Counted from the first letter of the stretch, positions 32,139 through 56,850 are shown. The stretch is DNA of 64,000 nucleotides from Hyaloraphidium curvatum SAG 235-1 (GCA_025558095.1 JAIVFI010000015.1:558001-622000), one strand, 5' to 3'. Translations and numbers: made by a program. The notes: a model not told the origin generated them from the sequence alone.

Positions 32139-33581
32139 TCAATCGTACAGCGGACAAAATGACTCGATGGTAAACCTGACGCCTGCGCCCTTGAGCAGCG
32201 TGAACAGGCCCACGCACACGGTGAACAGCGTGACCAGGAGCGCCCTCACGAACCCCGGGCCGACGTCGATCCCCGCCACGCGGGCCGTGTAGGGTGCTCC
32301 GTCCGCGCAGAGGCGGAGCTGGCGGAGCCGCGCGCGCAGCGTCGGGAGGGCGGGGTGCGAGGGGTCGGCGCGGGCGGCGAGGTCGGCAAGCTGCTTCTCG
32401 GCGAGGGCAAAGAGGCGGGTGACCTTGTATACCTGGGCGTTGCTCGCGGTGAAGTTGAGGAGGGCGGCGAGGAGCTCTCCGAAGCCAAAGATGGGGTAAC
32501 CGATAAGCCACATTGGCAGGCAGCTTCCGGTGGAGACGAAGACGATTCCAAAGACGAAAAAAGTCAGGATGACCATCGATGTCGAGGTAATGAACCGTTC
32601 GATGGTGGACAATCTGCCTTGCCACTCCAAGACAAGAAACCCGTGAAGCGAAGTGAACGTCTCTTCCTTGCGAAGGTCGGCACAATCGCCGGCTGATTGG
32701 GCGGGAACCGAGAGCCGGTTACGGAACCGGCCGACGAGGTCTTGCAGGGAGAGGAGAGCAGCTTGGTGGTGCAAACGGAGGGAAAGCTCCAGTGCCTTCA
32801 TCCCCGGTCTGAGGCAAGCAACGCAGACGGAATAACAAAAAGAGTGCAATGTGTTGAGAGCCACGAAAAGCACCGCAAGTGCGGTGCTCCAGCCGGTGGT
32901 CCAAGTCAGCGAAATGTAGGCACCGTACAGAGCGGTCGAAGTGGGCACAAAGCCGCTGACCGCCAAAGCGCCGACCAATTCGTACGCGACCTCGAGCAGC
33001 CGTCCGAGCCCGACGCCTCCGGGCAAGCTCCCCGCACAAGTGGCCGCAGGGCACGGGCATAGGCCGGCGGGGACGTCCGCATCGTGGCGCAGTAGGGAAA
33101 GAGAGGGCTTTCGCCGTGCGAGCTCGGCCCAGAGAGCCAGCTGCGTCAGGGGATGATGCGGCGGGTCCCGAGAATGCCTGAAAGAAGCATCCAAGGACGG
33201 CGCGGCCAGGATGCTTGGCGTTAGACCGACGAGGAAGACCGCGGTTCCTGCAGCAAGCTGAGTCGTTCCGAATACTGGAATAGCGGAGCGGAAAGCCCAG
33301 CCCGTCGCGATGATGAGCGTCATCTCGACCACCAGGAGCGCGGAAACGGTGAGGAGCTGGGTGAGCGGCGCGAGCGCAAACTGGAGGCGCGTGATTCCTC
33401 TGAGGAGGGGGGTGGGGAGCGCGCCCAGCAGCCAGGCGCGGGTACGCGAGACGCGCAGCTCCGCGGCCGGGTCCGCGGGCAGAGGTGCCAGCGGCGATTC
33501 GCTGGCCGGCAGGTCGGGGAAAAGCAGGAGGAATTCGTCGGGAGTGAAGCAGAGAGGCGAAACGGGCTGTGGTGTCTCCAT
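32139..33581 (-). CDS. 7-TM family member (copy B), gustatory-receptor-like/7TM ion channel candidate
   Basis: Intact 480-aa ORF with FTPDEFLLLFP, about 7 hydrophobic segments, HPLTQLALW, CPCPAATCAG, GSCLP, ARVAGIDVGPGFVRALLVTLFT..GLFTLLKGAG..ESFCP. Confidence 0.8.
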   Translation of the reverse strand: METPQPVSPLCFTPDEFLLLFPDLPASESPLAPLPADPAAELRVSRTRAWLLGALPTPLLRGITRLQFALAPLTQLLTVSALLVVEMTLIIATGWAFRSAIPVFGTTQLAAGTAVFLVGLTPSILAAPSLDASFRHSRDPPHHPLTQLALWAELARRKPSLSLLRHDADVPAGLCPCPAATCAGSLPGGVGLGRLLEVAYELVGALAVSGFVPTSTALYGAYISLTWTTGWSTALAVLFVALNTLHSFCYSVCVACLRPGMKALELSLRLHHQAALLSLQDLVGRFRNRLSVPAQSAGDCADLRKEETFTSLHGFLVLEWQGRLSTIERFITSTSMVILTFFVFGIVFVSTGSCLPMWLIGYPIFGFGELLAALLNFTASNAQVYKVTRLFALAEKQLADLAARADPSHPALPTLRARLRQLRLCADGAPYTARVAGIDVGPGFVRALLVTLFTVCVGLFTLLKGAGVRFTIESFCPLYD

Positions 33582-33769
33582 CGTTGCGGGTCCGTGGGCG
33601 CGTGCACAACGCCGCGGGAGGGGCAGTCGGCCGGTGTGTCAACAGGGGGACACAACGCCGTCAGATCGTTTCGGAAGTGTCCTTGGCGGAAGAGGCCAGG
33701 CCGTGGGCGCAGGGCGCCAGGTTGAGTAGACGGGTGGTGGTGGGGCTGTTTCGGCCCATGGCCGTGATA

Positions 33770-34233
33770 CTGTATAGCTCAGAGAGCTTCGAACAACACC
33801 CTCCCTGTGACTCTCCGGACCTCACGTACAGCACGCGATGTGACCGTGACCGTACGAGAAATTTCGTACACGATGCGCCCGTGTGACGCGTGACCGTGTA
33901 CGAGGTTTTGCGGCCGTCCCATTCCTCTCCCCACCGCTTTCGGAAACTGAGGCCGGGGCATTCTCATCATCCAATTGATCCGAATCGGACTCATCGTCTT
34001 CGCTTTGAGAAGCAGAAGACATTGTGGAGGGAGACGTTTCGGTGTTTGGTTGCTTATCGCGTGGAGGACGGGAGATCACGCACTCCGGTTTAGTCACCGC
34101 GATCTGGCCGGCAGTGTGACCAGGGGAATATAATTCGTACAGCTTCTAGAATGACCGTGACACCTGTACGGTAAATTTCGTACAGTTTTTCGGGTTGTGA
34201 CGCGTGATGTTCGAAGCTCTCTGAGCTATACAG
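33770..34233. mobile_element. MITE-like non-autonomous DNA transposon (Tc1/mariner-type TA duplication)
   Basis: Perfect 30-bp inverted repeat GATACTGTATAGCTCAGAGAGCTTCGAACA at 33766-33795 and 34208-34237, with TA at 33768-33769 and 34234-34235. Internal repeated TGACCGTGA / AATTTCGTACA motifs. Lower GC and no transposase. Confidence 0.8.
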
Positions 34234-34314
34234 TATCCGGCCACGGTGTCCACTTCCTCTAGCTGCGGATCTTTGTCTTGTCTTGCTGCGATCTACCAAT
34301 TCCGTCCCGCCAAA

Positions 34315-36045
34315 TCAGGTATCCCTCCTTGCCTCGGGCCAGAACCTCACCCCCTTCCTCGCCATTCCTCCTCCGACCCCGATCGCCGTCCCGTCCGCCC
34401 TCCAGCACGCCGCCCCCTGCATCGCCCCGTCCTCACCGAACGCCACCGCGCACATCCCGCCGCCGACCGTGGCGACCCTGACCGCGTCGTGCCCGCGCTT
34501 CTTGAGCTCTTCGACGACCGCGGCCGCGATCCCGGGCTCGATCTCGAGGTCGTACCCCTGCGTCCATACCCGCGGGGCCTCGACGGCCTCCTGCAGCGAC
34601 ATGCCGTGATCGAGCAGGTTGACGACGGCCTGCATCGCCGAGGGGAAGATCTTGAGCCCGCCGGGCAGGCCGAGGGCCAACCTGGGCTTGCCGTCCCGGG
34701 AGACGATCAGGGGCGACATGGAGGAGGTGACGCGCTTGCCGGGGGCCAGCGAGTTGGCGCGGCCGGGGTGGGGGTCGAAAACATACAGGTAGTTGTTGGG
34801 GATCATGCCCGTTCCCGGGACCATGTACCTCGCGCCGAAAAGCGAGTTGATGGTGAAGGTGCAGCAGAAGATCATTCCGGACGAGTCGGCGACGGTGAGG
34901 TGGGTGGTGTGCGAGTGCGGGTCGGCGACGCCGGGGCCGGCAAGGGGGGTGCCCGCCTCCACGCCGGGTTGGTAGCTTTGGGCGCGCTTCATGTCGAGCT
35001 CTGCGCGGCGCTCGGCGGCGTACTCGGGGGAGAGCAGGCGGGCGACGGGCACCGTGACGAAGGCCGGGTCGGCAGTTGCGGCGAGGCGGTCCGCAAAGGC
35101 GATCTTGGTCACCTCGGCGATCAGGTGCACGCCGTCGGCGGTGCCGAAGCCGGTATCGGCCACGTCCAGGCCCTCGAGGATGCCGAGCATCTGGCCGATG
35201 TGGAGCGGGCCGGCACAGGGGGGCGGGGGCCCGCGGATATCGTGCCCGCGGTAGGTGAAGTGCAGGACGTCGAGGTCGTGCGTGCGGTATCCGGCCAAGT
35301 CGGCCTCGGTCATGTGGCCCCCGTTGGCGGCCATGTCCTCCGCCACCTTCTTGCCCAACGGGCCGCCATACAGCGCACTGGGGCCGTCACGGACGACGGC
35401 CTCGAGCGTGCGGGCATAGTCGGCGTTGACGACGCGGTCGCCGGCCTTGATGGGCTTCCCTCCGGGGAGGAACACCTTGGAGATTTCGGGGTCCAGCGCC
35501 ATGTCCGCCGCGCACTCGGCCACGCAGCTGGCAAGGTACTCGGTGGCCACGAACCCGCGCTCGGCGTGCCTGATGGCCGGCGCCACCACGTCCGCCAGCG
35601 GCATCGTGCCCCACCGCTCCAGCATGGTGCACCACGCGAGCAGGTTCCCCGGCACGCCGACGGCTGCCCTGCCCACCGAGTTTTTCCTGCCCACGGCATC
35701 GAGCGAACCCTTTTTCGCTTCCGGATCGGGGGTAAAGGTCGTCGGGCCGACTGTTGCCGGGCAGCTAGCCTGCCCCTCCAGCACGTGGTGCGAGCCGTCG
35801 GCCAGCCGCACATGGGCGAAACCCCCGCCGAGCAGACCGACCATCATCGGCTCGACGACGGTGAGGGCAAACAGCGCGGCGACGGCGGCGTCGGCGGCGT
35901 TGCCGCCCGCCGCCAACATCTCGGCCGCGGCCGCCGACGCGAGCGGGTGGTTCGTGACGGCCATCCCGCGGCTGCCCGACGCGGGGCGCTTCTCGGTGGT
36001 GAACTGCGACCCCGCGCGGGCGCGCCACGAGGAGGAATCGGCCAT
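34315..36045 (-). CDS. ggt: Gamma-glutamyltranspeptidase, intronless, bacterial type
   Basis: RGMAVTNHPLAS..AGGNAADAAVA..VVEPMMVGLLGGGF, VGVPG, PPPCAG, nucleophile HTTH, TINSLFG, PGKRVTSSMSP, GLPGG. Confidence 0.95.
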   Translation of the reverse strand: MADSSSWRARAGSQFTTEKRPASGSRGMAVTNHPLASAAAAEMLAAGGNAADAAVAALFALTVVEPMMVGLLGGGFAHVRLADGSHHVLEGQASCPATVGPTTFTPDPEAKKGSLDAVGRKNSVGRAAVGVPGNLLAWCTMLERWGTMPLADVVAPAIRHAERGFVATEYLASCVAECAADMALDPEISKVFLPGGKPIKAGDRVVNADYARTLEAVVRDGPSALYGGPLGKKVAEDMAANGGHMTEADLAGYRTHDLDVLHFTYRGHDIRGPPPPCAGPLHIGQMLGILEGLDVADTGFGTADGVHLIAEVTKIAFADRLAATADPAFVTVPVARLLSPEYAAERRAELDMKRAQSYQPGVEAGTPLAGPGVADPHSHTTHLTVADSSGMIFCCTFTINSLFGARYMVPGTGMIPNNYLYVFDPHPGRANSLAPGKRVTSSMSPLIVSRDGKPRLALGLPGGLKIFPSAMQAVVNLLDHGMSLQEAVEAPRVWTQGYDLEIEPGIAAAVVEELKKRGHDAVRVATVGGGMCAVAFGEDGAMQGAACWRADGTAIGVGGGMARKGVRFWPEARRDT

Positions 36046-36445
36046 TTCGCGCGGGGCGGGAAAGCAGCGGGGGGCACTTCTTCTGTCGGTTCCGGGGCGA
36101 GTCGACGGCGAGGAATCAATCTCCGGCGCGATATTCGACGTGGTCTTTGTCGCGATGTTGCCCGGCAAGACGCCCTCGCCGCGATGCGCTGCCGCGGGAG
36201 GCTGTACTCGGGGTTGGTAATGCCGGCGCCGATGCCTCACCCAAATTGCAGCCGAATCTCGATGACGACGGCTCGGAATGCGGACGACCAGCTAGCAGTG
36301 GAGATATATCCGTCCAGCCCGTCAAGATCATGAACCGCGGGCGCTCCCGCCCGTGACCATCCACCCGACCCTTCTGCTGCGCCCGATGTCTCCTCGCCCT
36401 CACACCCGGCTCGCGCGCGACCCACAGCAGCACTACCCGATGGGT

Positions 36446-37067
36446 AACGTGCCGGCGCTCGCAGTTGCCAGGAGGCTGCACCACCGGGCCGTCAAGATCG
36501 CCCTGGAGGACCTGCTTTCTCGGTGCGCGACGGGCTCTGAGGTGCCGGATCCGTCCACGGAAGATCCCTACGTCCAGCTGCACTGGACCCTGTGCGCAAC
36601 CTACACGAACCAGCTGCGCTTCCTCTCGAACGGCCAGGGGTTGATAGTCGCCGCCCTCCCGCTTCTCGCGGTGTGCGGTATCGTCAACGCCGCCGTAGGC
36701 CGCTGCGTCCCGGCCTGGATAGCCCTCATCTTCTGCTACTTCGCAGTCTGGTTCGCCGTGCCCACGGCCATGGTCGCCGTCTGGAACCGCAACATCGTCT
36801 CGGTCGCGGAGCTGTACCGCAACGCGCAGGAGAGGCTGGTGCTCCTCGAGCCCGAGTCGGCATCTCCCGCGGCGCAGGAGCGGCACGGGAGGCGTTGGGC
36901 CTGCTGAGGGAGGGCATCGCCGCGCACAGGGGAACGTTCATGGGGTTGACGGTCCGGCTGGGAACCGTGAGAACTTACCTGGCCACGCTCTTCAAGGCTG
37001 CTGGGCCTGTGGACGCTGGCGGGGGGCCGGGATCGCGATCGCGGTCGACTCGGTCTGCCCGGGGTAG
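36446..37067 (+). pseudogene. Frameshifted partial duplicate (copy C') of the 7-TM gene at 39613-41085
   Basis: Near-identical to 40459-41085. There is a 1-nt deletion near 36893 (ggaggcgttgg vs ggaggctgttgg) and further indels near 36995-37020. Confidence 0.9.
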
Positions 37068-37106
37068 ATTACATATGCGAACGTGACAGAGTGCAACAAG
37101 GCAAGA

Positions 37107-38552
37107 TCACGCCGCCACCGCAAGCGCTGCCATTGCAACCAGTGTCCCCATCCATCCGGAAGCCCCCGAGGCTCCGACCCGCACCGCGCCCGACTCGGGC
37201 CTCGCATCCGTCGGCGGGGGGGGCTCCCCCGGGCACGACTCCACACGTCCCGTCGCGAAGACCAGTTCCGCCCTATCACACCACGCGGCCCTCTGGGTGC
37301 CATTGGTCCGCTCCGGGCACAGAAAGCCGGCGACGACGCGATTGTTTACCAGGGCCGCCGGCGCGGGCTCGCTGGGGGCCAGCTCTGTGCATTCACCGTC
37401 GACGAACCACGAGCATGCCGGGCCCGAGAAAAACGCCAGATCCGGGACGAAGGTACCGTTCCGCGGGCCGGCGCAGGCGACCCGCGGGCCGCGCCCGCCG
37501 TCCGCCGGGGTCAGCTCGGCGGCGAGGAAGTAGTGCCCCTGGTCATCGGGGTGGTAGGAGCGCAGGCACCGCGTGGTGCCTGCCTCCGGTGGGCATCCGG
37601 GCTGCTCGCAGAGGGGTTCGGGCGGGAGGGTGTCGTTGAGCGCCAGGGCGAGCGCGGCGGGGCACCACGGGAAGGTCGATGCCATGCCGTTGCAGGCGAC
37701 GTTGTTCGGAAAGCCTTTCACAGCGAGGCTGTAGTCGGGGCCGGGGAAGAGATGCGTGCATCCTTGGTCGCAAAAGTAGGCGCAGGAAAGCTCGGTTCGG
37801 AGCGGAAGCCCGTTCGGATTCGAGGGGAAGCCCGTTGCGCACTGGCCGTCCGTTTGGTTCCCGAAGCCGATGCGGCGAACCGATATGTACAGCCCCGGTA
37901 AAGGGCCGTCGCAGGTGCGCATGCATGTCCAGTCGCCGGTCCAGGGCGTGTTGTTGGCGACCAGGTGGGACAGGTCGGAGCAGCTGGCCGATTCCGGGAC
38001 CGGCGTGCCGAACAGCGACGAGTGCGCCTCGACGCACCACGGCACAAACGAGGTGATGTTGGTGATGTTCTTCTCCCCGTCCGGCCCAATGCATTCGGTC
38101 GGCCCGGCCGACTGCGGTGCCGGGCCGATGGCGTCGAGGCACCACGGGTCCGAGAAGAGCGTGCAAGTGCCGTTCCCCCGGCAGGCAACCGACGCGCTGC
38201 CGTACCACCCCGCCGCGCGTGCGTCCTCGACAGCGACGAACGCGCAGCCCAGGGACGGGATGCGCACGCAGCTGCCGCGCCGCTCGCACTCGGCCGGCCC
38301 CGGCGCGAAATCCCGACCGCGCACCCGCCGGCCGACGCCGACCACCCGGTCGCCGCCCTCGCACGCGCCGACGCAGCGCACCCGCGACCCGCCGTAGCCG
38401 CTGTCAGACCAGCGGCCGTAGACGCAGTTGATGAGGCCCGTGGCGGGGTCGAGCCATTCCTGCTGGTTGAGGCCGCTGTGCGAGGCCCGGGAGGCGGGCA
38501 CAAGGACGAGGAGGGCGACTGCAGAGAGGTAGCAGACAGTGAGTGTTCGCAT
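37107..38552 (-). CDS. Secreted Cys-rich protein with possible GPI-anchor signal
   Basis: Signal peptide MRTLTVCYLSAVALLVLVPASRA, many Cys, and a small-residue omega region followed by hydrophobic C-terminus ASGASGWMGTLVAMAALAVAA. Confidence 0.7.
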   Translation of the reverse strand: MRTLTVCYLSAVALLVLVPASRASHSGLNQQEWLDPATGLINCVYGRWSDSGYGGSRVRCVGACEGGDRVVGVGRRVRGRDFAPGPAECERRGSCVRIPSLGCAFVAVEDARAAGWYGSASVACRGNGTCTLFSDPWCLDAIGPAPQSAGPTECIGPDGEKNITNITSFVPWCVEAHSSLFGTPVPESASCSDLSHLVANNTPWTGDWTCMRTCDGPLPGLYISVRRIGFGNQTDGQCATGFPSNPNGLPLRTELSCAYFCDQGCTHLFPGPDYSLAVKGFPNNVACNGMASTFPWCPAALALALNDTLPPEPLCEQPGCPPEAGTTRCLRSYHPDDQGHYFLAAELTPADGGRGPRVACAGPRNGTFVPDLAFFSGPACSWFVDGECTELAPSEPAPAALVNNRVVAGFLCPERTNGTQRAAWCDRAELVFATGRVESCPGEPPPPTDARPESGAVRVGASGASGWMGTLVAMAALAVAA

Positions 38553-38750
38553 AGGTGTGTTTGGTTCAGTTTTGTCGTGTGACTCAGTGAGGGGCGGAGC
38601 AGCGGCAAGTTCGGGAAGGCGGGGGGGGGTTTCTCATTCAATCCGCGGATCCGGGAGACAGTCGCTTGGACACGGACCCAACCAGAATCAATCGTGCATC
38701 TGCCCGGCATCCGCCGAGGCTCGTCTCGGGCCCCCCTCGGTTCTGGGGCT

Positions 38751-38845
38751 TGCATGGCCCTCGCCGCCCGCGCAGCCGTGGTGACCCGCTGCGGCGAGTG
38801 CGACGCCAACGCGCACTGCGAGTACAGCGTGGTGTTCGGCGAGCA
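38751..38845 (+). repeat. About 95-bp orphan copy of the 5' coding region of the gene at 43148
   Basis: Near-identical to 43181-43275 (CGECDANAHCEYSVVFGE); similarity ends abruptly. Confidence 0.85.
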
Positions 38846-39029
38846 AGAAGAGTTGCTGCCGCTGCAACTTTGTTCCAGAACCTCCACAAAGATCAACTTC
38901 CGCAGGGCAACCATGGAGCCCTACAATGCAAACCCTCCCTTCCCGCATGCGTGCTCTTGGCTTGAACAACAGAAACTCCATCACGAAGATCTGGAAACAA
39001 AGTCCTCGAAACAAAACCTGGGACCCGGG

Positions 39030-39497
39030 TACTCTTTTGCCTGGCCACCTGCCCCAGAGACAGCGGACGCCTTTGCCCCGGTGGTCTCGTCCTCGATGCA
39101 GTGGACGAACGCGTCCACCACGCCTTCCATGGGTGTCCAGACCTCCAGACGATTTGAACATGCTTGCAAAAGTCGGATTCTCTGAAATGGCGTCGGGGTC
39201 GTCACCGAACGTCTTGAACTGGCGATCGATGGCGTTGGCTCCAAACGAAGGCATCATGTTCGAGCAGCCCAACGTACCCAGGACTCCAAACAAAGCCCGG
39301 TAGTACAGCAGAATATCGGATTGGATACGGCTCCTTGCCGGCGTTCTTTGCATCCCACTCGAGGCAGGATTGGGTGTTGACCACGAACTGGCCACGATCC
39401 GCGAGGTCAGGCGATCCCCGAAGTGAAGCACCGCACTCGAAGAGACCGTGCTTCCGCCCGTAACCAGAGCGGCTTTGCCGCGGATTTCGAAAACCAT
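39030..39497 (-). pseudogene. Short-chain dehydrogenase/reductase remnant
   Basis: MVFEIRGKAALVTGGST (Rossmann start) and the C-terminal-like TPMEGVVDAFVHCIEDETTGA fall in different frames. The catalytic middle region is not recognisable. Confidence 0.55.
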
Positions 39498-39612
39498 TGC
39501 CGTTACTTGTTGCCCGCGGTGCAGGCCGTCTCGGAATGTTCGCACGATCGACGCGATCGCGTCAGCCATCCTCCTCGCGGTCCCCGCAACAGCGCTGTTT
39601 GTCTTCCAGGCG

Positions 39613-41085
39613 ATGGCAGTGCTATTCACGGACCGCGAGTGGCTCGCCCTGTTCCCGGCCCAACCTCCGCCGGACCCGTCTCTCTTCCGCGGGCCACTTC
39701 CCGACCCGGCAAGGGAGCTCCGCGCCGCGGACGCGCTTTCCTTCGACGCGCTCGTCTCCAATCTGCCGGACGCGCTCCTGCGAGCGCAGGTGATCGCCGC
39801 GCGCCGCCTGGAGCCGCTGGCCGCCCGTTTCATTGTGCGCTACTCGGCGCTCGGCGCACTGACAATGGCGCTCTACGGCGCCGCAGTGGCCTTCAACGAC
39901 GGGCGGTACGGAGGGCCGCAGGTCGCCACGGGCTTCGCGACCATCGCCGCGCCTTTCGCCTTCCTCATTGGGACCATCGCGGCTACCCGCTTCCGCGAAG
40001 GCAGCTGGGCCCGCATCTACCGCCCCGTCGGCGAGCTCAAGAAGGGCGAGGTTCCGGCTCCCGCGGAAGACTTTAGCGCCCACCCTTTCGCGGGCATTGC
40101 CCGCTGGACCCAGCTGGTCTCCTTGCCGCCCAAGGCGGACGCCAAGGACGAGGAGAACGGCGGCGCGTCCGCGCCGACGGACAAGCTGACGGCGCACGAC
40201 CCGGACGACCCGGATTGCCCCTGCGGCCTTGCCACATGCCTCGGAGACGCGCCGAGATCGGCCGGCAGGCAGCGCGTGGTCCAGGTCGTCGTCCAGCTTG
40301 TGGAAGAGCTGGTGCAATTCGTTTTGACCGTGTGGACGCCGCTCGTGGTGCTCGGGGCGTCCGTGTGGACCTCGCCGTGGTCTGCACCGATCGCGGCGCT
40401 GTACTGCTGCGTGCTCGTGGTGCACGCCCCCGCGACCACCTTAGGAACGACGCAGACCAATTTGCCGGCGCTCGCGGTTGCCAGGAGGCTCCACCACCGG
40501 GCCGTGAAGATCGCCCTGGAGGACCTGCTTTCTCGGTGCGCGACTGGTTCCGAGGTGCCGGATCCGTCCACGGAAGAGCGCTACGTCCAGCTCCACTGGA
40601 CGTTGTGCGCGACTTACACGAACCATCTGCACTTCCTCTCGAACGGCCAGGGGTTGATTGTCACCGCGCTCCCGCTTCTCGCAGTGTGCGGGATCGTCAA
40701 CGCCGCCGTAGGCCGCTGCGTCCCGGCCTGGATAGCCCTCATCTTCTGCTACTTCGCAGTCTGGTTCGCCGTGCCCACGGCCATGGTCGCCGTCTGGAAC
40801 CGCAACATCGTCTCGGTCGCGGAGCTGTACCGCAACGCGCAGGAGAGGCTGGTGCTCCTCGAGCCCGAGTCGGCATCTCCCGCGGCGCTGGAGCGCCACG
40901 GGAGGCTGTTGGGCCTGCTGAGGGAGGGCATCGCCGCGCGCAGGGGAACGTTCATGGGGTTGACGGTCGGGCTGGGGACCGTGAGGACGTACCTGGCCAC
41001 GCTCTTCACGGTGCTGCTGGGCCTGTGGACGCTGCTGCGGGGGGCCGGGATCGCGATCACGGTCGACTCGGTCTGCCCGGGATAG
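39613..41085 (+). CDS. 7-TM family member (copy C), gustatory-receptor-like/7TM ion channel candidate
   Basis: FTDREWLALFP, HPFAGIARW, HDPDDPDCPCGLATCLG, RYVQLHWTL, GRCVP, GTFMGLTVGLGTVRTYLATLFT..GLWTLLRGAG..DSVCPG. Confidence 0.8.
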   Translation: MAVLFTDREWLALFPAQPPPDPSLFRGPLPDPARELRAADALSFDALVSNLPDALLRAQVIAARRLEPLAARFIVRYSALGALTMALYGAAVAFNDGRYGGPQVATGFATIAAPFAFLIGTIAATRFREGSWARIYRPVGELKKGEVPAPAEDFSAHPFAGIARWTQLVSLPPKADAKDEENGGASAPTDKLTAHDPDDPDCPCGLATCLGDAPRSAGRQRVVQVVVQLVEELVQFVLTVWTPLVVLGASVWTSPWSAPIAALYCCVLVVHAPATTLGTTQTNLPALAVARRLHHRAVKIALEDLLSRCATGSEVPDPSTEERYVQLHWTLCATYTNHLHFLSNGQGLIVTALPLLAVCGIVNAAVGRCVPAWIALIFCYFAVWFAVPTAMVAVWNRNIVSVAELYRNAQERLVLLEPESASPAALERHGRLLGLLREGIAARRGTFMGLTVGLGTVRTYLATLFTVLLGLWTLLRGAGIAITVDSVCPG

Positions 41086-41311
41086 ATAGCCCGACAGCAC
41101 ATGCTATGCACACGAATGTAACGCAGATTGCACGAAGGGACAACCACGACGCCGCTGCAAGGCCGGCCACAATTACTAGCGCCACTATCCGTGCTGTGGA
41201 ATTCAATCAGTCAATGGAGGATTTGACTTCGTTGATTGCACCAGCCTTGGAATGACTGACTGACAGACAGTGCGCAACGCGTGAATGGCACCGTGGGGTT
41301 CGTGCGCTCAA

Positions 41312-42844
41312 ATGGAACCTTGGGTGCGGAGCACTCTCCTCTGCGCCGTGCTATCGGTCGCTTTGGCGGGCGGGGCGGCGGGGGCGCCGTGCACTCTTGA
41401 CGGAGGGTGTGTGGCGCTGCCAGCGCATCTGCCGCCGCTGGCCTTCTTAGTGCCTACCGTCCCTGCTTCGATGCAGCCGGTTCATCGAATCATGCACCGA
41501 CGTCCGGCTGGACGGCTCTGTCGTGCGCGCGTCGTGCATGAACTGCGCCGGCAGAGCATCGTCCGCGGACTTCGACCTGCGGGCCGCGGTCGGCAACACG
41601 GACGGGCAGCTCTTCTTTCCGGGCACAGGATTGACCTCGTCGTGTGTTCTACGCTCTCTTTCGGTCGCGGGCGGCCGGGCGATGCTGGCGGCATCCTGCT
41701 CGGACCACAAAGGGACGCCGCGGGAAACGAGCCTGGATCTCAACTACGTGCTCAACAACGGCTGCGGAGTCCTCAAAGTATTTCGCTCGGATTGCACCGT
41801 CGAGGGCTCTATTGCGTCCTCTAATCCCGGAGCCACTTGCAGCTTGGATGACAAGTTGGTCGTGCTCTCCCCTTTGAAGGCGGACGAACTGAACCCGAGC
41901 CGTTCCGCTCACAGCGGGTTCTCGCAGTCGTGCTCGGCCATGAGGCTGGACGGTTTTGTTCTCCGCGCGTCATGCATCGCCTGCGACGGCACAACGTCTT
42001 CCACGAACATCGACCTGAGCAGAATCATCACCAACAGCTTTGGCACGCTCTCTTTTCCGGGGCAAGATTTTGCCCTGACGTGCAGCTCTGTTTCGCTAGT
42101 TTCGTCCAACGGTCCGTCCCTGCCCTCCGCCACCAGGTGATAGTGCTGATTTCGCGACGATCGGCCTCCGCAGGTGGACCAAACAAGACTCTCAGCGCAT
42201 CCTGCCGCGACGGCAAAGTCAGCACGCTGTACGCAACCCAGATGGATCTGGACTACATCCTGGCTAATCGGTGTGGACGCCTGGCCGCCGCCGGATCGGG
42301 TTGTACGTTCGTCGGCTCTTCGTCACTGGCTTCACCGCCCGCCGCGCAGCCTGTCGCACAACCTTCCGCCCAGCCCGTCGCGCAACCCTCCGCGCAGCCA
42401 GTCGCGCAACCCTCCGCCGCCGCTCCTACGATTTCCCAACCGGTCTCGGGCCTATCCATGGGCGCGATCGCCGGGATCGCGGTCGGCGCTTCGGTTGGCG
42501 CAGCCGCCCTTGGCGCCGGCCTGTTTGTTCTGCTGCGTCGGCCCGCTCACGGCTCACACGTCCTCGAGGAGCCCGAGGCGGTAGCATTGCCTCCTCACGA
42601 TGCCTCCCCGGACTTTGGGTCCAACGGGGACGCCCCGGCCCGCCCTTCTCCAAACGAAGACGTCGCGGCCCGTCCCCCGCCCAACGAGGACGCCGCGACC
42701 TGCGTGATCTGCATGGACCGGCCGAAGAACACCGTGGTCCGGCCCTGCAAGCACCTGGCCATGTGCGCAGAATGCGCCGCAACGGTCGAGAGCTGCCCGC
42801 TGTGCCGCGGAAGGGTGGCCAGCGTGGAGACGCTCTTCGTGTGA
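41312..42844 (+). CDS. Single-pass membrane protein: signal peptide, two CVNH (cyanovirin-N homology) domains, TM, C3HC4 RING
   Basis: GFIESC..RLDGSVVRASC..DLRAAVGNTDGQL and GFSQSC..LDGFVLRASC..IDLSRIITNSFGTL, QPVAQPSA x3 linker, TM GAIAGIAVGASVGAAALGAGLFVLL-RR, then CVICMDRPKNTVVRPCKHLAMCAECAATVESCPLCR. Three introns inferred. Confidence 0.85.
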
Positions 42845-49419: not shown

Positions 49420-51333
49420 ATGGCTGACGCTGCCGGAGACGCGCCCGCTCCGCGCGACCGACGCAAGCGGAGCGCCGCTGCGCTGCCCGACGCCGGGGCC
49501 AAGCGCCGGCGCCACCCGGGGCACGTGCTCAGCTCGGCGCGCGCCGTCGCCCTCGCGAGCTCCGTCGTGGAAGCCGTGCGGCGCGCGGTCGGGGCGCCAC
49601 GCGAGACAGACAACCCGCACACGCCCGAGGCCGCGTACCGCCGCGCGATGGACCACAAGGACGGCACGGGCCTGCGGGAAGAGGACCCGGCCGAAGCCGC
49701 GCGGTGGTTCGCGAGAGCTGCGCAGGGCGGCCACGTCGGGGCCGCGGTGGAGCTCGCGTGGATGTGCTGGGAGGGCGAGGGGATGGACGGCAAGGACTTG
49801 GATGCGTATGCGCGGCTGGCCGCGTTTGCGGCCGAGAAGGGCCACGTCGACGCGATGGTGATGCTCGCGGGCGCGTACAAGTTTGGCGACGGCGTCGAAG
49901 AGGACTCGGATCAGGCCTACTACTGGTTCCGGCGCGCGGCGGGGGAGGGCGACGTGCCGGCCATGACCGAAGCCGCACGCATCCTGCTCGAGAGCCCTAC
50001 CCGCTCCTCCGACGACGTCGAAGAAGCGTTGCAGCTGCTCCGAGGCGCAGCGGACCCGCAAGAGGCCAATGACACAGACGCGCAGCTCATGCTAGGGGAA
50101 CTGCACTTCAAGGGCGAGCTGGTGCCGCGGAACCTGGTCGAAGCCAGGAGCTGGCTGGAACTCGCGGCGGTCAAGCGCGGCGTCGACCATGGGCTGCTCC
50201 CCGAAGACGAAAAGGAGGAATACTACCAGGCCGAGCACATGGCGATGAACGAGGCGGCGCCGCTCCTGGAGCAAGTAAAGGAAATGCTGAAGGAGGAGTT
50301 GTGGCAGGCGCAGGAGGCTTTGGCGAGGATGAGGATCGTCTACTCGGATCTAGTCTTCGACGAAGGACCGCCTTTTGCCCGGGGTGGGTTCGGAGAAGTG
50401 CATCGGGCCGTTCTCAAGGGGGCGACCGCGGTGGCGGTCAAGAGAATCACAAGGAACGACTTGCGGGCTAGGGGGATCTTCAAGGACGAAGTTACCGCGT
50501 GGATCTCGCTTGTGCACTCAAACAGTGAGCACCTCATCGGCTCCGAGGTCCCCGGCTGACCCGCCTTCTCCGCCGCAGTCAACCCGCTCATGGCCTTCTG
50601 TGACAGTCCCCTCCTCATGGTATCGGAACTGTGCCCCGACGGCAACATGCAGACGTATCTGTCCAAGCAAAACTGGGCTCCCGCGCTCGGCGCCTCCCTC
50701 CTCGCCGGCGTCGCCCAAGGCATGGCCCACCTGCACTCCCACGACATCATCCACGGCGACCTCAAATGCGCCAACGTGCTCGTCGGCCGCGGCGGAACCG
50801 CGCGGATCTCGGATTTCGGACTGGCGAAGCTGCGGCGCACCGTTGCGGCCGGGACCGGGAACGGTGCGGGCCCGGGCGGGACGCCCGCGTTCATGGCGCC
50901 GGAGCTGCTCTCGGGAGGCGAGCCGGAGAAGCCTTCGGATGTGTACGCGTACGCCATGCTGTGCTACGAGGTCGTCACCAAGGGGATGATGCCGTTCTTT
51001 GGGCACCGCATGCCGGGGCTCGATAGCATCTTGGCTAAAATGGCTTTGGCGATGGACAAGGAAAAGGTGCTCCGAGGCGAGAGGCCCAAGGATCACCTTG
51101 ATGCGGCCGAGGAGGGACTGCTGGTGGAGATCATGGACAAGTGCTGGCAGCAGGATCCAAGGGAAAGGCCGCGGTTCGTGGATGTCGCGAAGATAATGGA
51201 GGACGTGGCCGTTGAGGCCCGACTGATGGCAGATGGTGCAACGGCGTCATTTTCGGAGCTAAGCAGGTCGTATTCAGGAGCAGGCGGCGAAGACGGGGGA
51301 TCGATGGCGCCAGCCAATAATGTAACCAAATAG
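49420..51333 (+). CDS. Sel1-like repeats + TKL-type protein kinase
   Basis: Sel1 repeats (EAARWFARAAQGGH, QAYYWFRRAAGEGD, EARSWLELAA). Kinase motifs GGFGEV, VAVK, HGDLKCANVL, DFG, GTPAFMAPE, SDVYAY. Intron near 50525-50577. Confidence 0.92.
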
Positions 51334-53230
51334 CTCGAAGCAGGTTGCCGACTGCCCGCGCGCGAAGAAAACAACGCGCCCCAAAGCGAGCAGTGCCGCA
51401 GTGCTCGAGGTCACTGGATTACCTCCTGAGCCCGGAGGCCCAAGAGCGGGAGGTCTGCCAACTCCCAACCGATGCCCTCGCCTTACCGGTCTCTTGGCGA
51501 GCGGCGGCCCCGGTCGACGTCGACGTTGACGTTACTCACGGAATGGCACGCGGGGGCGGGCGATCGGCGATTGCGCCATGCCGAAGCCGCTCACTGCCAC
51601 AAGCCTCTGCCGGTTGGCGTTGCGCTAGCAGGCGATCGCGCAACGCAGAACCTGCTGAGGCAGGGCGCCCATGGAGGCGAACAACAGGCCAGTACCGTCG
51701 ACGTTGATTCCCAAGACCAGCGGCAAGGACCGGGCTTGGATGATTTCGAAAAACCCCCGTAGGCGCGCTGGTTGGCACTGCCGCAGTCGTGCAAGAACGA
51801 AACGTAGCAGGCGGCGGAGTGAGAGCCAAGGACCAGTCCGTGTGTACGGAATGAAGCCCTGGTTGGAAGAGACGGAAGGGGCCAAGTGGCGATCGGAGAG
51901 TATAGTGCGGTTGAATCCAGAGGTCACGTAGCCGGGCACGTGCTGGAGCACCTCGCCGACCACGAGTCTGAGCAGCCCCTCCAGGCGCGGCATGTCGAAC
52001 CGGTTGAAGTACGACGGCTTCTTGGGCAGCTTGGGCTCGCCATAGCGGGTCGCGTTCCAGGGGTGCACGTAGTGCGCCCGGAGCTTGAGCGTCGCCTCGC
52101 GGAAGGTGTCGGCAGCCGGTTCAAGCGGTCCCTGTAATGTTCCCGCCAGTGCCAGGCGGACGACTGGCCGGTGCTCAAGGCAGTCCGCGACGGGATGGGA
52201 TCCAGCTGCGTCTAGCCTCGATCGGCCGTGCTGTTGCGCGGTCGTGGATCCGTATCTTGAGCGGGTCACCGTCGTCGCCGAAGGGTACGAGGAGGATATA
52301 ATTTGGTACTCTATCAATGCTATGCGCTGGCCTAACCCTATTAAATTAGGGGAACCTCAAGCTGAGCTGCCGCATCGTCGGCCGCGGTCGAAGTCGGGGG
52401 TCGTCGGGCTGTGCGCCGAGCGGCTCGTACGTCCCTCACGGCTACGGATGAGGGGCCGTCCCTCCGCCCATGCAGGTTGGCAGCGGGGTAACCCATACGA
52501 CCGGCCGTGGGACAACATCCGATGATCCAGTCGTCGAGTTCCTGGAGCTCGGCACTCCAGCGCGGCCACCCTGGCGGAAAGGCTGGACGGACACCCCGCG
52601 GGATCGCCCGCGCCACGGATCAGGTGCGCGGCGAAAACTCCATCATTTGCTCCCGTGTTGTGCCTCTGCCGGGAGGAACGGAATGGAGATTGCGCGCAAG
52701 GGCGTTCGGGAACTCATCCCTCAAAGGGACCTTTCCCTCGGAATGGTCCCCGCGCCGGTCGCTTTTGGTTTGAATGTAGATGAGGAACTGATTCTTGGGG
52801 CGTAGGGGGACTTTTAAGTGTTTGGTGGGATTGCTAGCTCCTCATTACACACGACGCGCACCTCGGGAGACATCCCGCAACCTCTCTTCCCCGGCTACAG
52901 TCAAGTACATTCAGCGCCGTTCGCTTATTCACATCCAGGGCCTATCCGACCCGAAGAGCCAAGCGGGATTCGCGCGCCGGGTTAGAGCTTCAGGCCCGGT
53001 TCTGACCCGGACCGTCGCACACCACATAAAGGCGAGGCCGAGAGCCGTAGACAGAGACTGAAGCTGCCCGCTGTACTGCGCCCGTATAGAACTGTACTAA
53101 CGGATTGGTCCGCACACCGCCTCGCGGGGCGTCACTCCTGCCATCTGGCTCGGCACCGCCGAGACGCGGCCTCACCGCCGCCGCCCGTCGCCGCTGGGCT
53201 GGACGGAGCCCGGGCTGCCGTCCGCCGCCC

Positions 53231-53638
53231 GCGAGCTGCAGCTGCAGCGCCACGTAGGGCTCGTTGGCGGTGGGGATCGAGGTGCCGGCTAGCCCGCGGG
53301 CGGCGTCGCGGTGCCGTTTCAGCATGTCCGAAAGGAGCAGGTCGACGGCGCGGTGCTGCATGCGGCCGGCGAGCTTGAGCATCTGCGGGTTGGGGGAGTT
53401 GTGGGCGAGGAAGATGTGCGTAGGGAGCGTCTACAGCATGGCTGGCTGCATGATCCCGGGTTCGCGGGAGCACCAATCAGAGGACGATCTGACCGGCTAG
53501 GCCATCCATCCACCCATCGTAGAGGACAAAGACGAGGATCCTCCCCCAAGTCGACCATATGAGCGGGGTGAACGTGAACATGACGTAGATGGTCCAGTTG
53601 GAGAACACCTTGCCCAGGGACTCAACGACGAGCTCCGT
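53231..53638 (-). pseudogene. Degenerate internal duplicate (copy D') of the 7-TM gene at 55270-56850
   Basis: Highly similar to 55754-56172 (TELVVE.LGKVFSNWTIYV; MLKLAGRMQHRAVDLLLSDML; EPYVALQLQLA), truncated at both ends and carrying indels. Confidence 0.88.
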
Positions 53639-54016
53639 GCCCAAATTCGCCGTCTGCTGATCCATCTCTGGAATCGAGATCCTCGCTGAATGCGGCGTCG
53701 GGATGATTTAGGGATTGTTGCAGGTGCCGATCGTCCTCGCACGATTGGGCCTGGATCCAGAAGCGGCTGGGGATCCCATCGCTCCAGATAGCGAAAGAGG
53801 TTTGTCGCAAACCGACTCATGCCACTGCACACTCCTCGACAGACCATTACCTGGCATAGACGGCGCGGGTTCCGCGAGCGTACTTTCCAAAGATTTCTTC
53901 GTCGGGGAGATTTCGAGCATCAGCCGCCATGGTGTGTCACTAGCCCTCTGCCGTGAGGGACGAGGACACAGATCCCCCAAAAAAACCTGTTCCGCGACCA
54001 AAGCACTGCCACCACG

Positions 54017-54959: not shown

Positions 54960-55269
54960 GTTGGTCGAGCGGCTGGGTGAAGGCAGCGGGGAATTATTTG
55001 GCTCTAAGGGAAAAGGGTGTACACTCGAGAGAACGAGTTCTGGTCATCGTTATACGAATAGCTGAACTTTGGGAAACCGAATCGTGCACATTTTAGCCTC
55101 CTGCTTTTGTTTGATTCTCTCAATGAATCAATGTGAACAATTGGAGGACAATGCGAAGGTTCCCCATCTCCACGATCTTGAGCAGGGTCGGCGACGTAGG
55201 TCCTGTCGGCAAAGGTCCAATCAGATCGTACAGCATTTCCAGCCCCTCATTCGGCGGCCCACGACCGCT

Positions 55270-56850
55270 TCACCCCGCACAAACCGTCTCCACGGTGAAG
55301 TACATCCCCGCTGCCCTGAGCACGGTCCACATCCCGAACCCCAGCGTGATCCACGTGACCACGTACGTCCTCACCAGGCCGTACCCCACCTCGAACCCCA
55401 TGAACGTGGCCTTGAGCCCCTCCGTCCCGGCAAAGACCCCGAGCAGCTCCGCGTGGTCCGCGAGCGAGGCGGCGACCGCCGCCGGGGGCCGCCGCGAGCC
55501 CATCAGCAGGATCGAGGTGCGCGCGCGGCGGTACAGGTCGGCGACGTGGGCGATCTGGGAGTTGGCGGCGGCGATGCCCAGCAGGGACTTGAGGAAGACG
55601 GTGAACCAGAGCAGCAGCAGGACGGGGTTCCAGACGGGGACGCAGCCGGCAAAGGCGGCGTTGGCCAGGATCCCGGCGAACATGAAGAAGCCCAGCACGG
55701 TGAGCGGGCCCCGGCCGGTGGACATGAAGGCCAGCTGCGTCGGCCATGCGGCGGCAAGCTGCAGCTGCAGCGCCACGTAGGGCTCGTCCGCGGCGGGGAT
55801 CGGGGTGCCGGCGAGCCCGCGGGCGGCGTCGCGGTGCCGGTTCAGCATGTCCGAGAGGAGGAGGTCGACGGCGCGGTGCTGCATGCGGCCGGCGAGCTTG
55901 AGCATCTGCGGGCTGGGGGCGTTGTGGGTGAGGAAGATGTGCGTGGGGAGCGTGTACAGCAGGGCGGCGGTGGCTGGCGGTCGGGCGGATGTGAGCGGGA
56001 TCGGCGGGAGCACGATGATATGGAGAACTGGCCGGCTTGGACCATCCATCCACCCACCGTAGAGGACAAAGAGGAGGATGCTCCACCAGGTCGACCACAT
56101 GAGCGGGGCGAACGTGACGTAGATGGTCCAGTTGGAGAACACCTTGCCCAGGTACTCGACGACGAGCTCCGTGAACGGCTCTGCGGCGCGCATCACGGAC
56201 GCGGTGCCCGGCAGCTTCCCCGCGCAGGAATCCAGCGGGCAGGGGCAGAACGGGTCCGCGGGATCGTGCGCGACCAGCGCCGGAGGTCCCCCAGGGGAGG
56301 TGAGGAGCTCCTTCCAGCGCGCGAGCACGGCAAAGGGGTGCGTGTCGAACGACACGGGGGTGACGAAAAAGGACGCGGGCCTGGCTCGCGCGTTGAAGGA
56401 GGAAAGGAGGCCGGTTGCAGCGAGAACCGCAGTCGGCACCTGGAACAGCAGGAGGGCGGCGGTGGCACCGGCCACGTGCCGGCTGCTGAACATCTGCAGC
56501 TCGCCGTTGAAGACCCACAGCGGGACGAGCAGCAGCGCCCACGCGACGGTGTCGACGAACAGGCGCGCGGGCGACAGCGTTGCCAGCGGCGCGGCGGCCA
56601 GGTGGACGCGCGTGCAGAGGCCGAGCAGCGGCAAATCGCCCATTCCCGCGAGCAGCGCGGCGGCGTCGAGCGGCGGCGGGCCCGCCGGTGGCGCTTCGGG
56701 GGTTTCGTCGCCGCAACGCGTCTTTCGGAAGAGGACGTCGTCGGCGGGCCGCTCGGGGAACAAGGCGCGGCGCTCCGCCGGCGAGAGCGCGAGCGGCGCG
56801 GCCGGAGGAAGCGGGAGGCGGTCGCCGTCGCCTGTTTCCATGGTACTCAT
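55270..56850 (-). CDS. 7-TM family member (copy D), gustatory-receptor-like/7TM ion channel candidate
   Basis: LSPAERRALFP, HPFAVLARW, HDPADPFCPCPLDSCAG, EPYVALQLQL, AGCVP, ATFMGFEVGYGLVRTYVVTWIT..GMWTVLRAAG..ETVC. Probable in-frame 84-nt intron at 55974-56057. Confidence 0.8.
   Translation of the reverse strand: MSTMETGDGDRLPLPPAAPLALSPAERRALFPERPADDVLFRKTRCGDETPEAPPAGPPPLDAAALLAGMGDLPLLGLCTRVHLAAAPLATLSPARLFVDTVAWALLLVPLWVFNGELQMFSSRHVAGATAALLLFQVPTAVLAATGLLSSFNARARPASFFVTPVSFDTHPFAVLARWKELLTSPGGPPALVAHDPADPFCPCPLDSCAGKLPGTASVMRAAEPFTELVVEYLGKVFSNWTIYVTFAPLMWSTWWSILLFVLYGGWMDGPSRPVLHIIVLPPIPLTSARPPATAALLYTLPTHIFLTHNAPSPQMLKLAGRMQHRAVDLLLSDMLNRHRDAARGLAGTPIPAADEPYVALQLQLAAAWPTQLAFMSTGRGPLTVLGFFMFAGILANAAFAGCVPVWNPVLLLLWFTVFLKSLLGIAAANSQIAHVADLYRRARTSILLMGSRRPPAAVAASLADHAELLGVFAGTEGLKATFMGFEVGYGLVRTYVVTWITLGFGMWTVLRAAGMYFTVETVCAG

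What the first reader, a model, noticed from the sequence alone, without database searches (positions are those of the whole stretch)
32139..56850. Expanded family of gustatory-receptor-like 7-TM proteins (candidate chemosensory ion channels), six copies in 64 kb
Seen: three intact paralogs (32139-33581, 39613-41085, 55270-56850) and three fragments (14975-15741, 36446-37067, 53231-53638). They are highly divergent yet share these motifs: N-terminal [FL][TS]xxExxxLFPxxP with no signal peptide; HPxxxxAxW and CPCxxxxCxG between TM2 and TM3; a long helical TM4-TM5 loop with [YF]xxL[HQ]xxL; a very short TM5-TM6 loop containing G(x)C[VL]P; NxxIxxVxxLYxxA after TM6; and C-terminal [AG]xFxGxxVxxGxVRT[YA]xxTxFTxxxGLWxxLRGAG..C. 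Established: the insect Gr/Or, GRL and plant DUF3537 7TM ion-channel superfamily has an inside N-terminus, long cytosolic TM4-6 extensions and a split TM7 preceded by a short beta-like 'hxhxGhxhd' segment. Inference: these genes are a lineage-specific, rapidly birthing and dying chemoreceptor-like repertoire in a non-animal. At this density the genome could hold very many copies.
Basis: partly seen in the sequence, partly recalled or inferred. Interest (0 to 1): 0.9.

Follow-up and report, generated by a model that had tools for sequence, protein, structure and literature searches.

The report
Huge fungal family of insect-chemoreceptor-fold channels
The early-diverging fungus Hyaloraphidium curvatum carries several hundred intact genes for seven-helix membrane proteins whose predicted shape matches insect smell and taste receptor channels, which would be by far the largest such repertoire I found reported outside animals, though what they sense is unknown.

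Summary
Observation confirmed. The window holds three intact paralogs (480, 490 and 526 aa, about 30% identical) and three fragments at the stated coordinates, with the stated motifs.

The genome is Hyaloraphidium curvatum, a non-flagellated monoblepharid fungus.

The models show:
- seven TM helices, N-terminus inside;
- cytoplasmic TM4-6 extensions;
- TM7 split by a beta-hairpin.

A four-copy model of the C-terminal half passes its controls (0.68 vs 0.00), with contacts in the anchor domain.

The family is very large:
- 89 mostly full-length ORFs found by genome search, a lower bound;
- 257 motif hits against 4 in the control;
- 413-466 protein clusters, and all 10 sampled are H. curvatum.

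Close paralogs show dN/dS of 0.28-0.45. New features are an invariant cytosolic H-C-C-C motif and an invariant extracellular cysteine pair.

Verdict: a new, hugely expanded family with the 7TMIC fold. Channel and sensing functions are inferred, not shown. First readers noted the same family in other windows of this genome.

The parts
32139..33581 (-). Intact paralog 1 (480 aa). AlphaFold2 model me52a978a1f04.
39613..41085 (+). Intact paralog 2 (490 aa), the reference for residue numbering. AlphaFold2 model mde8ff90057a5.
   Evidence: Translation. Model pLDDT 89.4, pTM 0.88. OR/GR are the top hits. ESM Atlas TM 0.56/0.67 to an animal cluster and 0.46/0.56 to an arthropod 7tm_7 cluster. Contigs of a probable RNA run cover 38460-40722.
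55270..56850 (-). Intact paralog 3 (526 aa from this ATG; the open frame continues upstream to 57084). It carries an extra insertion after TM4.
   Evidence: Translation. HMM hit 3e-172. ORF list.
14992..15732 (+). Fragment 1: the C-terminal half only (profile 249-487). No close parent gene in the window.
36443..37067 (+). Fragment 2: a 94%-identical partial duplicate of the 3' 620 nt of paralog 2, with a frame change near 36880.
   Evidence: Contigs of the public run differ from the assembly here (A>T at 36876, G>C at 36883, an extra T after 36893).
53230..53653 (-). Fragment 3: an 85%-identical partial duplicate of the middle of paralog 3 (profile 211-327), in two frames.
40195..40239 (+). 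Cytosolic loop motif H195-x3-D199-x2-C202-P-C204-x4-C209 in the TM2-TM3 loop of paralog 2. Candidate metal (zinc) site.
   Evidence: H195 1.00, D199 0.95, C202 0.99, C204 1.00 and C209 0.99 across about 150 family proteins. pLDDT is about 94 here. Metal binding is an inference.
40717..40719 (+). Cys369 in the 4-residue TM5-TM6 outer loop. Candidate disulfide partner of Cys488.
   Evidence: 0.99 conserved. Strand 369-371 is modelled next to strand 481-483.
40879..40935 (+). TM7a (residues 423-441), a cytoplasmic helix of the anchor domain.
   Evidence: DSSP of the model. It forms the lowest-error inter-subunit contacts with residues 400-419 of the neighbouring copy in the four-copy model.
40936..40971 (+). 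Beta-hairpin linker (residues 442-453) that splits TM7. Gly449 is 0.97 conserved.
   Evidence: The 'EE--EE' pattern appears in both models. Conservation.
40972..41043 (+). TM7b (residues 454-477), the most conserved helix and the candidate pore lining (R458, T463, T466, R476).
   Evidence: Mean top-residue frequency is 0.61, against 0.34-0.39 for TM1-6. Per-site conservation.
41074..41076 (+). Cys488 in the extracellular C-terminal tail, invariant.
   Evidence: 1.00 conserved.

Best explanation
These genes belong to a family that I could find only in Hyaloraphidium curvatum. It has very roughly 250-470 members, mostly intronless, each encoding a protein of about 480-530 aa with the fold of insect odorant/gustatory receptors (the 7TMIC superfamily).

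Shown in silico:
- seven TM helices with the N-terminus in the cytosol;
- long cytosolic extensions of TM4, TM5 and TM6;
- TM7 split by a beta-hairpin into a cytosolic TM7a and a membrane TM7b;
- self-association of the C-terminal half through TM6-extension/TM7a/TM5-extension contacts, as in the Orco anchor domain.

Inferred:
- The proteins form tetramers with the conserved, Thr-rich TM7b lining a central pore.
- The highly variable membrane-embedded parts of TM1-6 form diverse ligand pockets.
- The repertoire therefore works as ligand-gated cation channels that report many different environmental or self-derived chemicals.
- An invariant cytosolic H-x6-C-x-C-x4-C motif before TM3 probably binds a metal.
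- An invariant Cys pair probably ties the outer C-terminal tail to the TM5-TM6 loop.
For: Fold.
- Two paralogs about 30% identical give confident models.
- Foldseek probability is 0.84-1.00 for OR/GR (one Gr43a entry 0.66), best E 7e-4. Transporters and GPCRs score TM 0.17 or less.
- ESM Atlas gives TM 0.56/0.67 and 0.57/0.65 to cnidarian and echinoderm clusters, and 0.46/0.56 to an arthropod 7tm_7 cluster.

Topology. K+R per protein is about 30 on the proposed inside and 1.3 on the outside.

Conservation. It is highest in TM7b, the C-terminus and the TM5-TM6 loop, and lowest in TM1-6.

Oligomer. Four copies of residues 280-490 score 0.68 against a best control of 0.00. Runs agree in at least 58% of contacts and partner pLDDT is at least 64. 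The tool's mark was reached by 21 of 30 proteins solved as homo-pairs and by 0 of 23 solved as single chains. Each copy touches two neighbours through residues 400-419 against 423-442 and 317-325.

Real genes. Eighty-seven of the 89 genome matches have no internal stop, and most cover nearly the whole profile. dN/dS is 0.28-0.45. They are annotated as hypothetical proteins at NCBI. A GT-AG intron occurs in some copies.

Copy number..
Against: - No sequence or profile similarity to 7tm_6, 7tm_7, DUF3537 or any PDB chain, even at E up to 10.
- The animal TM7 signature TYhhhhhQF is not kept.
- Foldseek TM-scores to solved structures are only 0.31-0.47.
- The four-copy prediction used a truncated protein without its alignment. 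It is unlike the tool's calibration, and it could reflect memory of solved OR/GR tetramers.
- No ligand, current or localisation data exist.
- H. curvatum is reported as non-flagellated (PMC8371127), so classical chemotaxis is not an obvious use.
- Transcription rests on a single run whose RNA label is a guess.
Confidence: 0.6

Rival explanations
1. Same 7TMIC fold, and probably the same ancestry, but not a chemosensory ion-channel repertoire. The family might instead serve self/non-self or pathogen recognition, membrane scaffolding, or metal-dependent signalling through the H-C-C-C loop. Its expansion would then resemble other fungal recognition-gene expansions.
For: The authors of the 7TMIC papers themselves say that for most members it is not known whether they are ion channels (PMC9998090). 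The organism is described as non-flagellated. The family has an invariant cytosolic H-C-C-C motif that is not among the defining 7TMIC features I read in the papers.
Against: The conservation pattern mirrors that described for insect receptors: TM7b and the anchor region are most conserved, and the membrane parts of TM1-6 most variable (PMC9998090 and bioRxiv 10.1101/2023.08.30.555482). The predicted self-association uses the anchor domain.
Confidence: 0.25
2. Convergent or only superficial similarity. This would be an unrelated orphan 7-TM family whose long helices happen to align with OR/GR structures.
Against: Every top hit, for two paralogs and three search methods, belongs to the one family. 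The alignments are co-linear over about 300-350 residues and cover nearly the whole of each target. The idiosyncratic hallmarks are all present: N-in 7TM, TM4-6 extensions, and TM7a/hairpin/TM7b. From my own knowledge, AlphaFold2 was trained on structures released before the first Orco structure (6C70, released August 2018), so the fold is unlikely to have been copied from memory.
Confidence: 0.1
3. Non-functional repeated ORFs, for example transposon cargo, or chance open frames in GC-rich DNA.
For: The sequence is high in GC, so long spurious ORFs are common here. Three of the six copies in the window are fragments. Most copies lack introns.
Against: dN/dS is 0.28-0.45 with dS 0.5-1.2. Residues stay invariant across about 150 members at 30% overall identity. 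The models are confident. In the one recent duplicate pair examined, similarity was confined to the ORF, with no repeat detected in the flanks by a megablast-level comparison.
Confidence: 0.03

Closest known systems
Insect odorant and gustatory receptors and Orco (Pfam 7tm_6 and 7tm_7; PDB 6C70, 7LIC, 8V00, 8V3D, 8VC1, 8JM9)
   Same: Predicted fold and helix order. N-in, 7-TM topology. Short outer loops. Cytoplasmic TM4-6 extensions. TM7a/beta-hairpin/TM7b. TM7b is the most conserved helix. Predicted self-association through the anchor region. Large and very divergent repertoire.
   Different: No detectable sequence similarity, and the TYhhhhhQF motif is absent. The proteins are about 100 aa longer, with a 70-90 aa TM2-TM3 loop carrying an invariant H-C-C-C motif, a conserved N-terminal ...E.LALFP motif, and an invariant outer Cys pair. 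The host is a fungus, and the genes are mostly intronless.
Unicellular-eukaryote GRLs, including the chytrid Spizellomyces GRL1 (Benton et al. 2020, PMC7746228)
   Same: They come from an early-diverging fungus, have 7TMIC-like secondary-structure features, and conserve the TM7 motif poorly (only one of four positions in the Spizellomyces proteins).
   Different: That paper reports a single copy per Spizellomyces genome and 1-6 per protist. Here there are hundreds. I could not compare the sequences directly because no tool gave me the Spizellomyces protein.
PHTF-like 'Class-B' 7TMICs (Benton & Himmel 2023; Himmel et al. 2023 preprint)
   Different: No Pfam PHTF hit. The loop here is only about 70-90 aa and has its own motifs. 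The best ESM Atlas shape matches are animal clusters and an arthropod 7tm_7 cluster, not PHTF. Class assignment was not tested.
Plant DUF3537 proteins (PF12056)
   Same: A non-animal branch of the 7TMIC superfamily. Three DUF3537 clusters appear among the language-model neighbours at score 0.91, which is a lead only.
   Different: No HMM match in the proteins or in the genome. The genome search's control also found nothing, so that negative result is uninformative.

Membership tests
7TMIC superfamily (insect OR/GR, GRL, DUF3537, PHTF) | Seven transmembrane helices in a protein of about 350-500 aa | tested here: met
   Both AlphaFold2 models show seven membrane helices, and family-averaged hydropathy agrees. 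Lengths are 470-545 aa.
7TMIC superfamily (insect OR/GR, GRL, DUF3537, PHTF) | Intracellular N-terminus and extracellular C-terminus (inverse of GPCRs) | tested here: met
   By the positive-inside rule over 27 members, proposed cytosolic segments hold about 30 K+R and proposed outer loops plus the C-tail hold 1.3. No dedicated topology predictor was available.
7TMIC superfamily (insect OR/GR, GRL, DUF3537, PHTF) | Intracellular loops longer than extracellular loops | tested here: met
   Outer loops are 8, 17 and 4 residues. Inner loops and extensions run from tens of residues up to about 68-88.
7TMIC superfamily (insect OR/GR, GRL, DUF3537, PHTF) | TM4, TM5 and TM6 project into the cytosol to form an anchor domain | tested here: met
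   Helices 284-311, 323-343 and 372-414 in model 1, and 261-290, 308-352 and 357-404 in model 2.
7TMIC superfamily (insect OR/GR, GRL, DUF3537, PHTF) | TM7 split into cytosolic TM7a and membrane TM7b | tested here: met
   H423-441, a hairpin with strand residues 446-447 and 450-451, then H454-477. The same arrangement appears in model 2.
7TMIC superfamily (insect OR/GR, GRL, DUF3537, PHTF) | Global structural similarity to Orco/OR/GR clearly above that of unrelated membrane proteins | tested here: met
7TMIC superfamily (insect OR/GR, GRL, DUF3537, PHTF) | Sequence or profile similarity to a known member family (7tm_6, 7tm_7, DUF3537, PHTF) | tested here: not met
   No such Pfam hit for any of 27 members at E up to 10. 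The family profile finds no OR/GR in the PDB. From the papers read, several accepted 7TMIC groups also lack this, so it does not exclude the superfamily.
Animal GR/GRL (Class-A) family | TM7 motif TYhhhhhQF | tested here: not met
   Family TM7b reads R-[T]-x3-T-x2-T-[VL]-x2-G-L-W. Tyr is present in paralogs 2 and 3 but is not the common residue family-wide, and Q-F is absent.
7TMIC superfamily (insect OR/GR, GRL, DUF3537, PHTF) | Tetramer held by the anchor domain, with TM7b lining the pore | tested here: inconclusive
   Four copies of residues 280-490 score 0.68 against a best control of 0.00. Contacts lie in the TM6 extension, TM7a and TM5 extension, and each copy touches two others. This is a truncated construct, a prediction only, and possibly from memory of solved tetramers.
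7TMIC superfamily (insect OR/GR, GRL, DUF3537, PHTF) | Ligand-gated cation channel activity | not testable with these tools
   Needs electrophysiology or flux assays.

The most novel reading that the evidence does not exclude
A non-flagellated unicellular fungus has independently evolved a repertoire of insect-receptor-fold channels as large as that of an insect, roughly 400 genes or about 2% of a 32 Mb genome. The family has its own additions: a cytosolic H-C-C-C metal site and a disulfide-tethered C-terminal tail. It would be the largest 7TMIC family known outside animals, and a microbial system in which to ask what this ancient channel class senses.
Probability: 0.45. Interest if true: 0.85.

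Novelty: new variant of a known kind. Interest (0 to 1): 0.74.

Why it matters
7TMICs are the insect smell and taste receptors. Outside animals they were reported as single or few-copy genes of unknown function: one GRL in each of two Spizellomyces chytrids, and 1-6 in a few protists (PMC7746228).

A fungus with hundreds of divergent, selectively maintained copies would show that large 7TMIC repertoires are not an animal invention.

It would also provide hundreds of natural sequence variants for defining the pore, anchor and pocket regions of the fold.

It raises a concrete, testable question: what does a non-motile planktonic fungus sense with them?

The invariant H-C-C-C loop suggests a regulatory input that is not among the 7TMIC features described in the papers I read.

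I found no paper describing this family. The NCBI records call the proteins hypothetical.

Tried and rejected
**Searches that found nothing or were uninformative**
- Pfam scans found only scattered single-member noise: three proteins at E up to 1, and all 27 members at E up to 10.
- The family profile against PDB sequences gave one irrelevant weak hit.
- The search for homologous proteins, with a single protein and with the 27-row alignment, returned only the query and two close H. curvatum paralogs. It was too insensitive for 30% paralogs, so its blank says nothing about other species.
The 3-row and 7-row alignments matched patterns but no relatives. This is a weak negative.
- PF12056 and PF08395 found nothing in the genome, but the controls also found nothing, so this is uninformative.
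- A literature search for gene-family or receptor work on Hyaloraphidium found nothing relevant.

**Analyses that were inconclusive**
- Duplication unit: a head-to-head pair on contig 14 aligns at 83% over the ORF only. The comparison was at megablast level, so whether the flanks were duplicated is undecided.
- Expression: the single run holding the stretch is labelled RNA only by guess. Its contigs have very uneven depth (0-115), with holes and an adapter-tagged end. That looks more like RNA than DNA but proves nothing. The last 360 nt of paralog 2 are not covered.

**Readings rejected**
- GPCR or transporter fold (TM 0.17 or less).

- Read laying was given 5,901 letters.
Full report
**1. What is in the window**

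The three stated ORFs translate without stops into proteins of 480, 490 and 526 aa.

A six-frame scan of the window with a 27-member family HMM finds exactly six hits.
- Intact genes: 32151-33578(-), 39613-41082(+), 55276-56817(-).
- Fragments: 14992-15732(+), 36443-36993(+), 53230-53653(-).

Fragment 2 is a 94%-identical DNA copy of the last 620 nt of paralog 2, which lies 2.5 kb away. Fragment 3 is an 85% copy of the middle of paralog 3. Fragment 1 has no close parent in the window.

**2. Whose genome**

The nearest database proteins are hypothetical proteins of Hyaloraphidium curvatum. An earlier follow-up on this assembly gave the same organism.

H. curvatum is an atypical, non-flagellated fungus. 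It was first described as a colourless green alga and is now placed in the Monoblepharidomycota (PMC8371127). The window is about 66% GC.

**3. Size of the family**

- A genome search with the three-sequence profile returned 89 matches. Only 87 of 787 first-look candidates were scored, so this is a lower bound. Eighty-seven of the 89 have no internal stop, and most cover nearly the whole profile.
- The DNA pattern for D-x-x-C-P-C-x4-C occurs 257 times, against 4 for the reversed control.
- The pattern for C-P-C-x4-C-x-G occurs 288 times, against 33.
- A profile search of 1.84 billion representative proteins found 466 clusters at E<=1e-3, 413 at E<=1e-10 and 292 at E<=1e-30.
- Ten clusters sampled across the top 150 are all single H. 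curvatum NCBI entries.
- Correcting the motif counts by how often each motif is kept in the family gives roughly 400-470 copies. This is my extrapolation.

Copies lie on most contigs, both scattered and in clusters (for example five within 33 kb on contig 5). The three window genes are not each other's closest relatives: paralog 2 is 71% identical to a copy on contig 23, and paralog 1 is 58% identical to one on contig 5.

I found no relative outside this species. My means were weak, though: searches are insensitive, and ranks 151-466 are not listed.

**4. Real genes**

- Eight close pairs give dN/dS of 0.28-0.45 at dS of 0.5-1.2.
- Across about 150 members that share only about 30% identity, fourteen positions are 92-100% conserved.
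- Most copies have no intron. At least two members have a 63-75 nt gap at profile position 360/361. In one of them the gap begins with GT and ends with AG.
- One public run holds 82% of the sampled words of window 36000-41900, and its contigs cover 38460-40722. Depth is very uneven, and the run's RNA label is only a guess. Transcription is therefore likely but not shown.

**5. Fold**

No Pfam family or PDB sequence matches.

AlphaFold2 with the 27-paralog alignment gives confident models:
- paralog 2: pLDDT 89.4, pTM 0.88;
- paralog 1: pLDDT 91.1, pTM 0.89.

|---|---|---|---|---|

- A second look at Foldseek's candidates for paralog 2 gives 18 of 18 top rows as OR/GR/Orco. Z runs from 13.4 to 8.8, with Orco 6C70 at 9.6.
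- Foldseek itself ranks OR/GR first, mostly at probability 0.84-1.00 and a best E of 7e-4. LeuT, pyrophosphatases, MATE transporters and GPCRs score TM 0.09-0.17.
- In the ESM Atlas the nearest shapes are cnidarian and echinoderm clusters (TM 0.56/0.67 and 0.57/0.65) and an arthropod 7tm_7 cluster (0.46/0.56). All other rows are 0.39 or below.

The similarity is thus at the weak end of the accepted range, close to PHTF. It is specific, full-length and reproduced in a second paralog.

**6. Anatomy** (residues of paralog 2)

| Residues | Element |
|---|---|
| 1-53 | cytosolic N-terminus, with a conserved ...E-W-L-A-L-F-P helix |
| 54-72 | pre-TM1 helix |
| 73-93 | TM1 |
| 94-100 | outer loop of 7-8 residues |
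| 101-124 | TM2 |
| 125-212 | cytosolic loop with HP..A..RW and the H-C-C-C motif |
| 213-239 | TM3 |
| 240-256 | outer loop, 17 residues |
| 257-278 | TM4 |
| 284-311 | TM4 cytosolic extension |
| 323-343 | TM5 cytosolic extension |
| 346-367 | TM5 |
| 368-371 | outer loop of 4 residues, containing Cys369 |
| 372-414 | TM6, running far into the cytosol |
| 423-441 | TM7a |
| 442-453 | beta-hairpin |
| 454-477 | TM7b |
| 478-490 | outer tail, ending in Cys488 |

- K+R counts are about 30 inside and 1.3 outside.
- Conservation is highest in TM7b, the tail and the TM5-TM6 loop (0.61-0.69). It is lowest in the membrane parts of TM1-6 (0.34-0.39).
- The 7TMIC papers describe the same pattern for insect receptors: conserved pore and anchor, and greater divergence elsewhere.

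**7. Oligomer**

Four copies of residues 280-490 were folded three times and scored 0.68, 0.71 and 0.66. Three controls with an unrelated partner all scored 0.00.
- The runs agree in at least 58% of contacts, and partner pLDDT is at least 64.
- The tool's mark was reached by 21 of 30 proteins solved as homo-pairs and by 0 of 23 solved as single chains.
- The tool warns that four copies are unlike its calibration, and that a pass may come from memory of solved relatives.
- Confident contacts join residues 400-419 (TM6 extension) of one copy to 423-442 (TM7a) and 317-325 (TM5 extension) of the next. Each copy touches two others.

That is the arrangement described for the Orco anchor domain. The model supports a ring-like homo-oligomer. 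It does not show one.

**8. How it most likely works**

- Shown in silico: the fold, the topology, the conservation pattern and anchor-mediated self-association.
- Inferred: tetrameric cation channels with TM7b (invariant R458, T466 and R476, and common T463) lining the pore. Ligand pockets would lie in the variable outer halves of TM1-6, and hundreds of specificities would be maintained under purifying selection.
- New features: H195, C202, C204 and C209 are invariant, sit in the cytosol just before TM3, and probably form a metal site. Cys369 and Cys488 are invariant, and the models place strands 369-371 and 481-483 side by side, so a disulfide is likely.

**9. Comparison and novelty**

The family meets every structural criterion used in the literature for 7TMICs. 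It fails the two sequence criteria: a profile hit and the TYhhhhhQF motif. Several accepted groups also fail those.

Known fungal members are single GRLs in two Spizellomyces species (PMC7746228). A later structural screen reported fungal 7TMICs only in Chytridiomycota and Blastocladiomycota and does not mention Hyaloraphidium.

I therefore rate this as a new, sequence-orphan and hugely expanded variant of a known kind. First readers of this scan flagged the same family in at least seven other windows of this genome. Those notes are unchecked and are not independent evidence.

**10. Limits**

- There is no experimental evidence for channel activity, ligands, localisation or stoichiometry.
- Homology as opposed to convergence is not settled.
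- The distribution outside H. curvatum was not adequately tested.
- The copy number is an estimate.

Noticed in passing
window 34315-36240 (-): An uninterrupted 641-aa ORF matches gamma-glutamyltranspeptidase end to end (PF01019, E 1.5e-127). I did not test its origin.
   Followed up: partly
The 614-aa ORF has no Pfam match at E<=1e-3, so that reading has no profile support so far.
   Followed up: partly
window 36876-36893: Contigs of the only public run holding this stretch differ from the assembly (A>T at 36876, G>C at 36883, an extra T after 36893). This is exactly where fragment 2 changes frame. It could be an allele, a paralogous contig or an assembly error.
   Followed up: no
L034:4926-5000 (-) and G000:C18:86449-86511 (+): Some family members have a 63-75 nt gap at the same profile position (360/361, end of TM5). 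In L034 the gap begins with GT and ends with AG, as a short intron would. Most copies have none.
   Followed up: partly
L032:5265-8840 (G000:C14:38265-41840): A head-to-head pair of family genes is 83% identical over the ORF only, separated by about 530 bp. A second inverted pair, with identical motif DNA, lies at C10:808992 and C10:813173.
   Followed up: partly
L033:7134-8179 (-): A family copy broken into four frame pieces, apparently a decayed pseudogene, inside a cluster of family copies on contig 5.
   Followed up: no
window 49420-50559 (+); 41930-42844 (+); 9464-11311 (-); 16520-17806 (+); 59187-60461 (+): Neighbouring ORFs with clear Pfam matches: a Sel1-repeat protein, a C-terminal RING finger, an amidohydrolase, FUZ/MON1/HPS1 longin domains and a polysaccharide pyruvyl transferase. 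There is no obvious functional link to the 7-TM genes.
   Followed up: no
window 5-3454 (+): A 1149-aa ORF with only weak matches to coiled-coil families (Filament, Fib_alpha, TPR_MLP1_2), all below their cut-offs. Probably a long coiled-coil protein.
   Followed up: no
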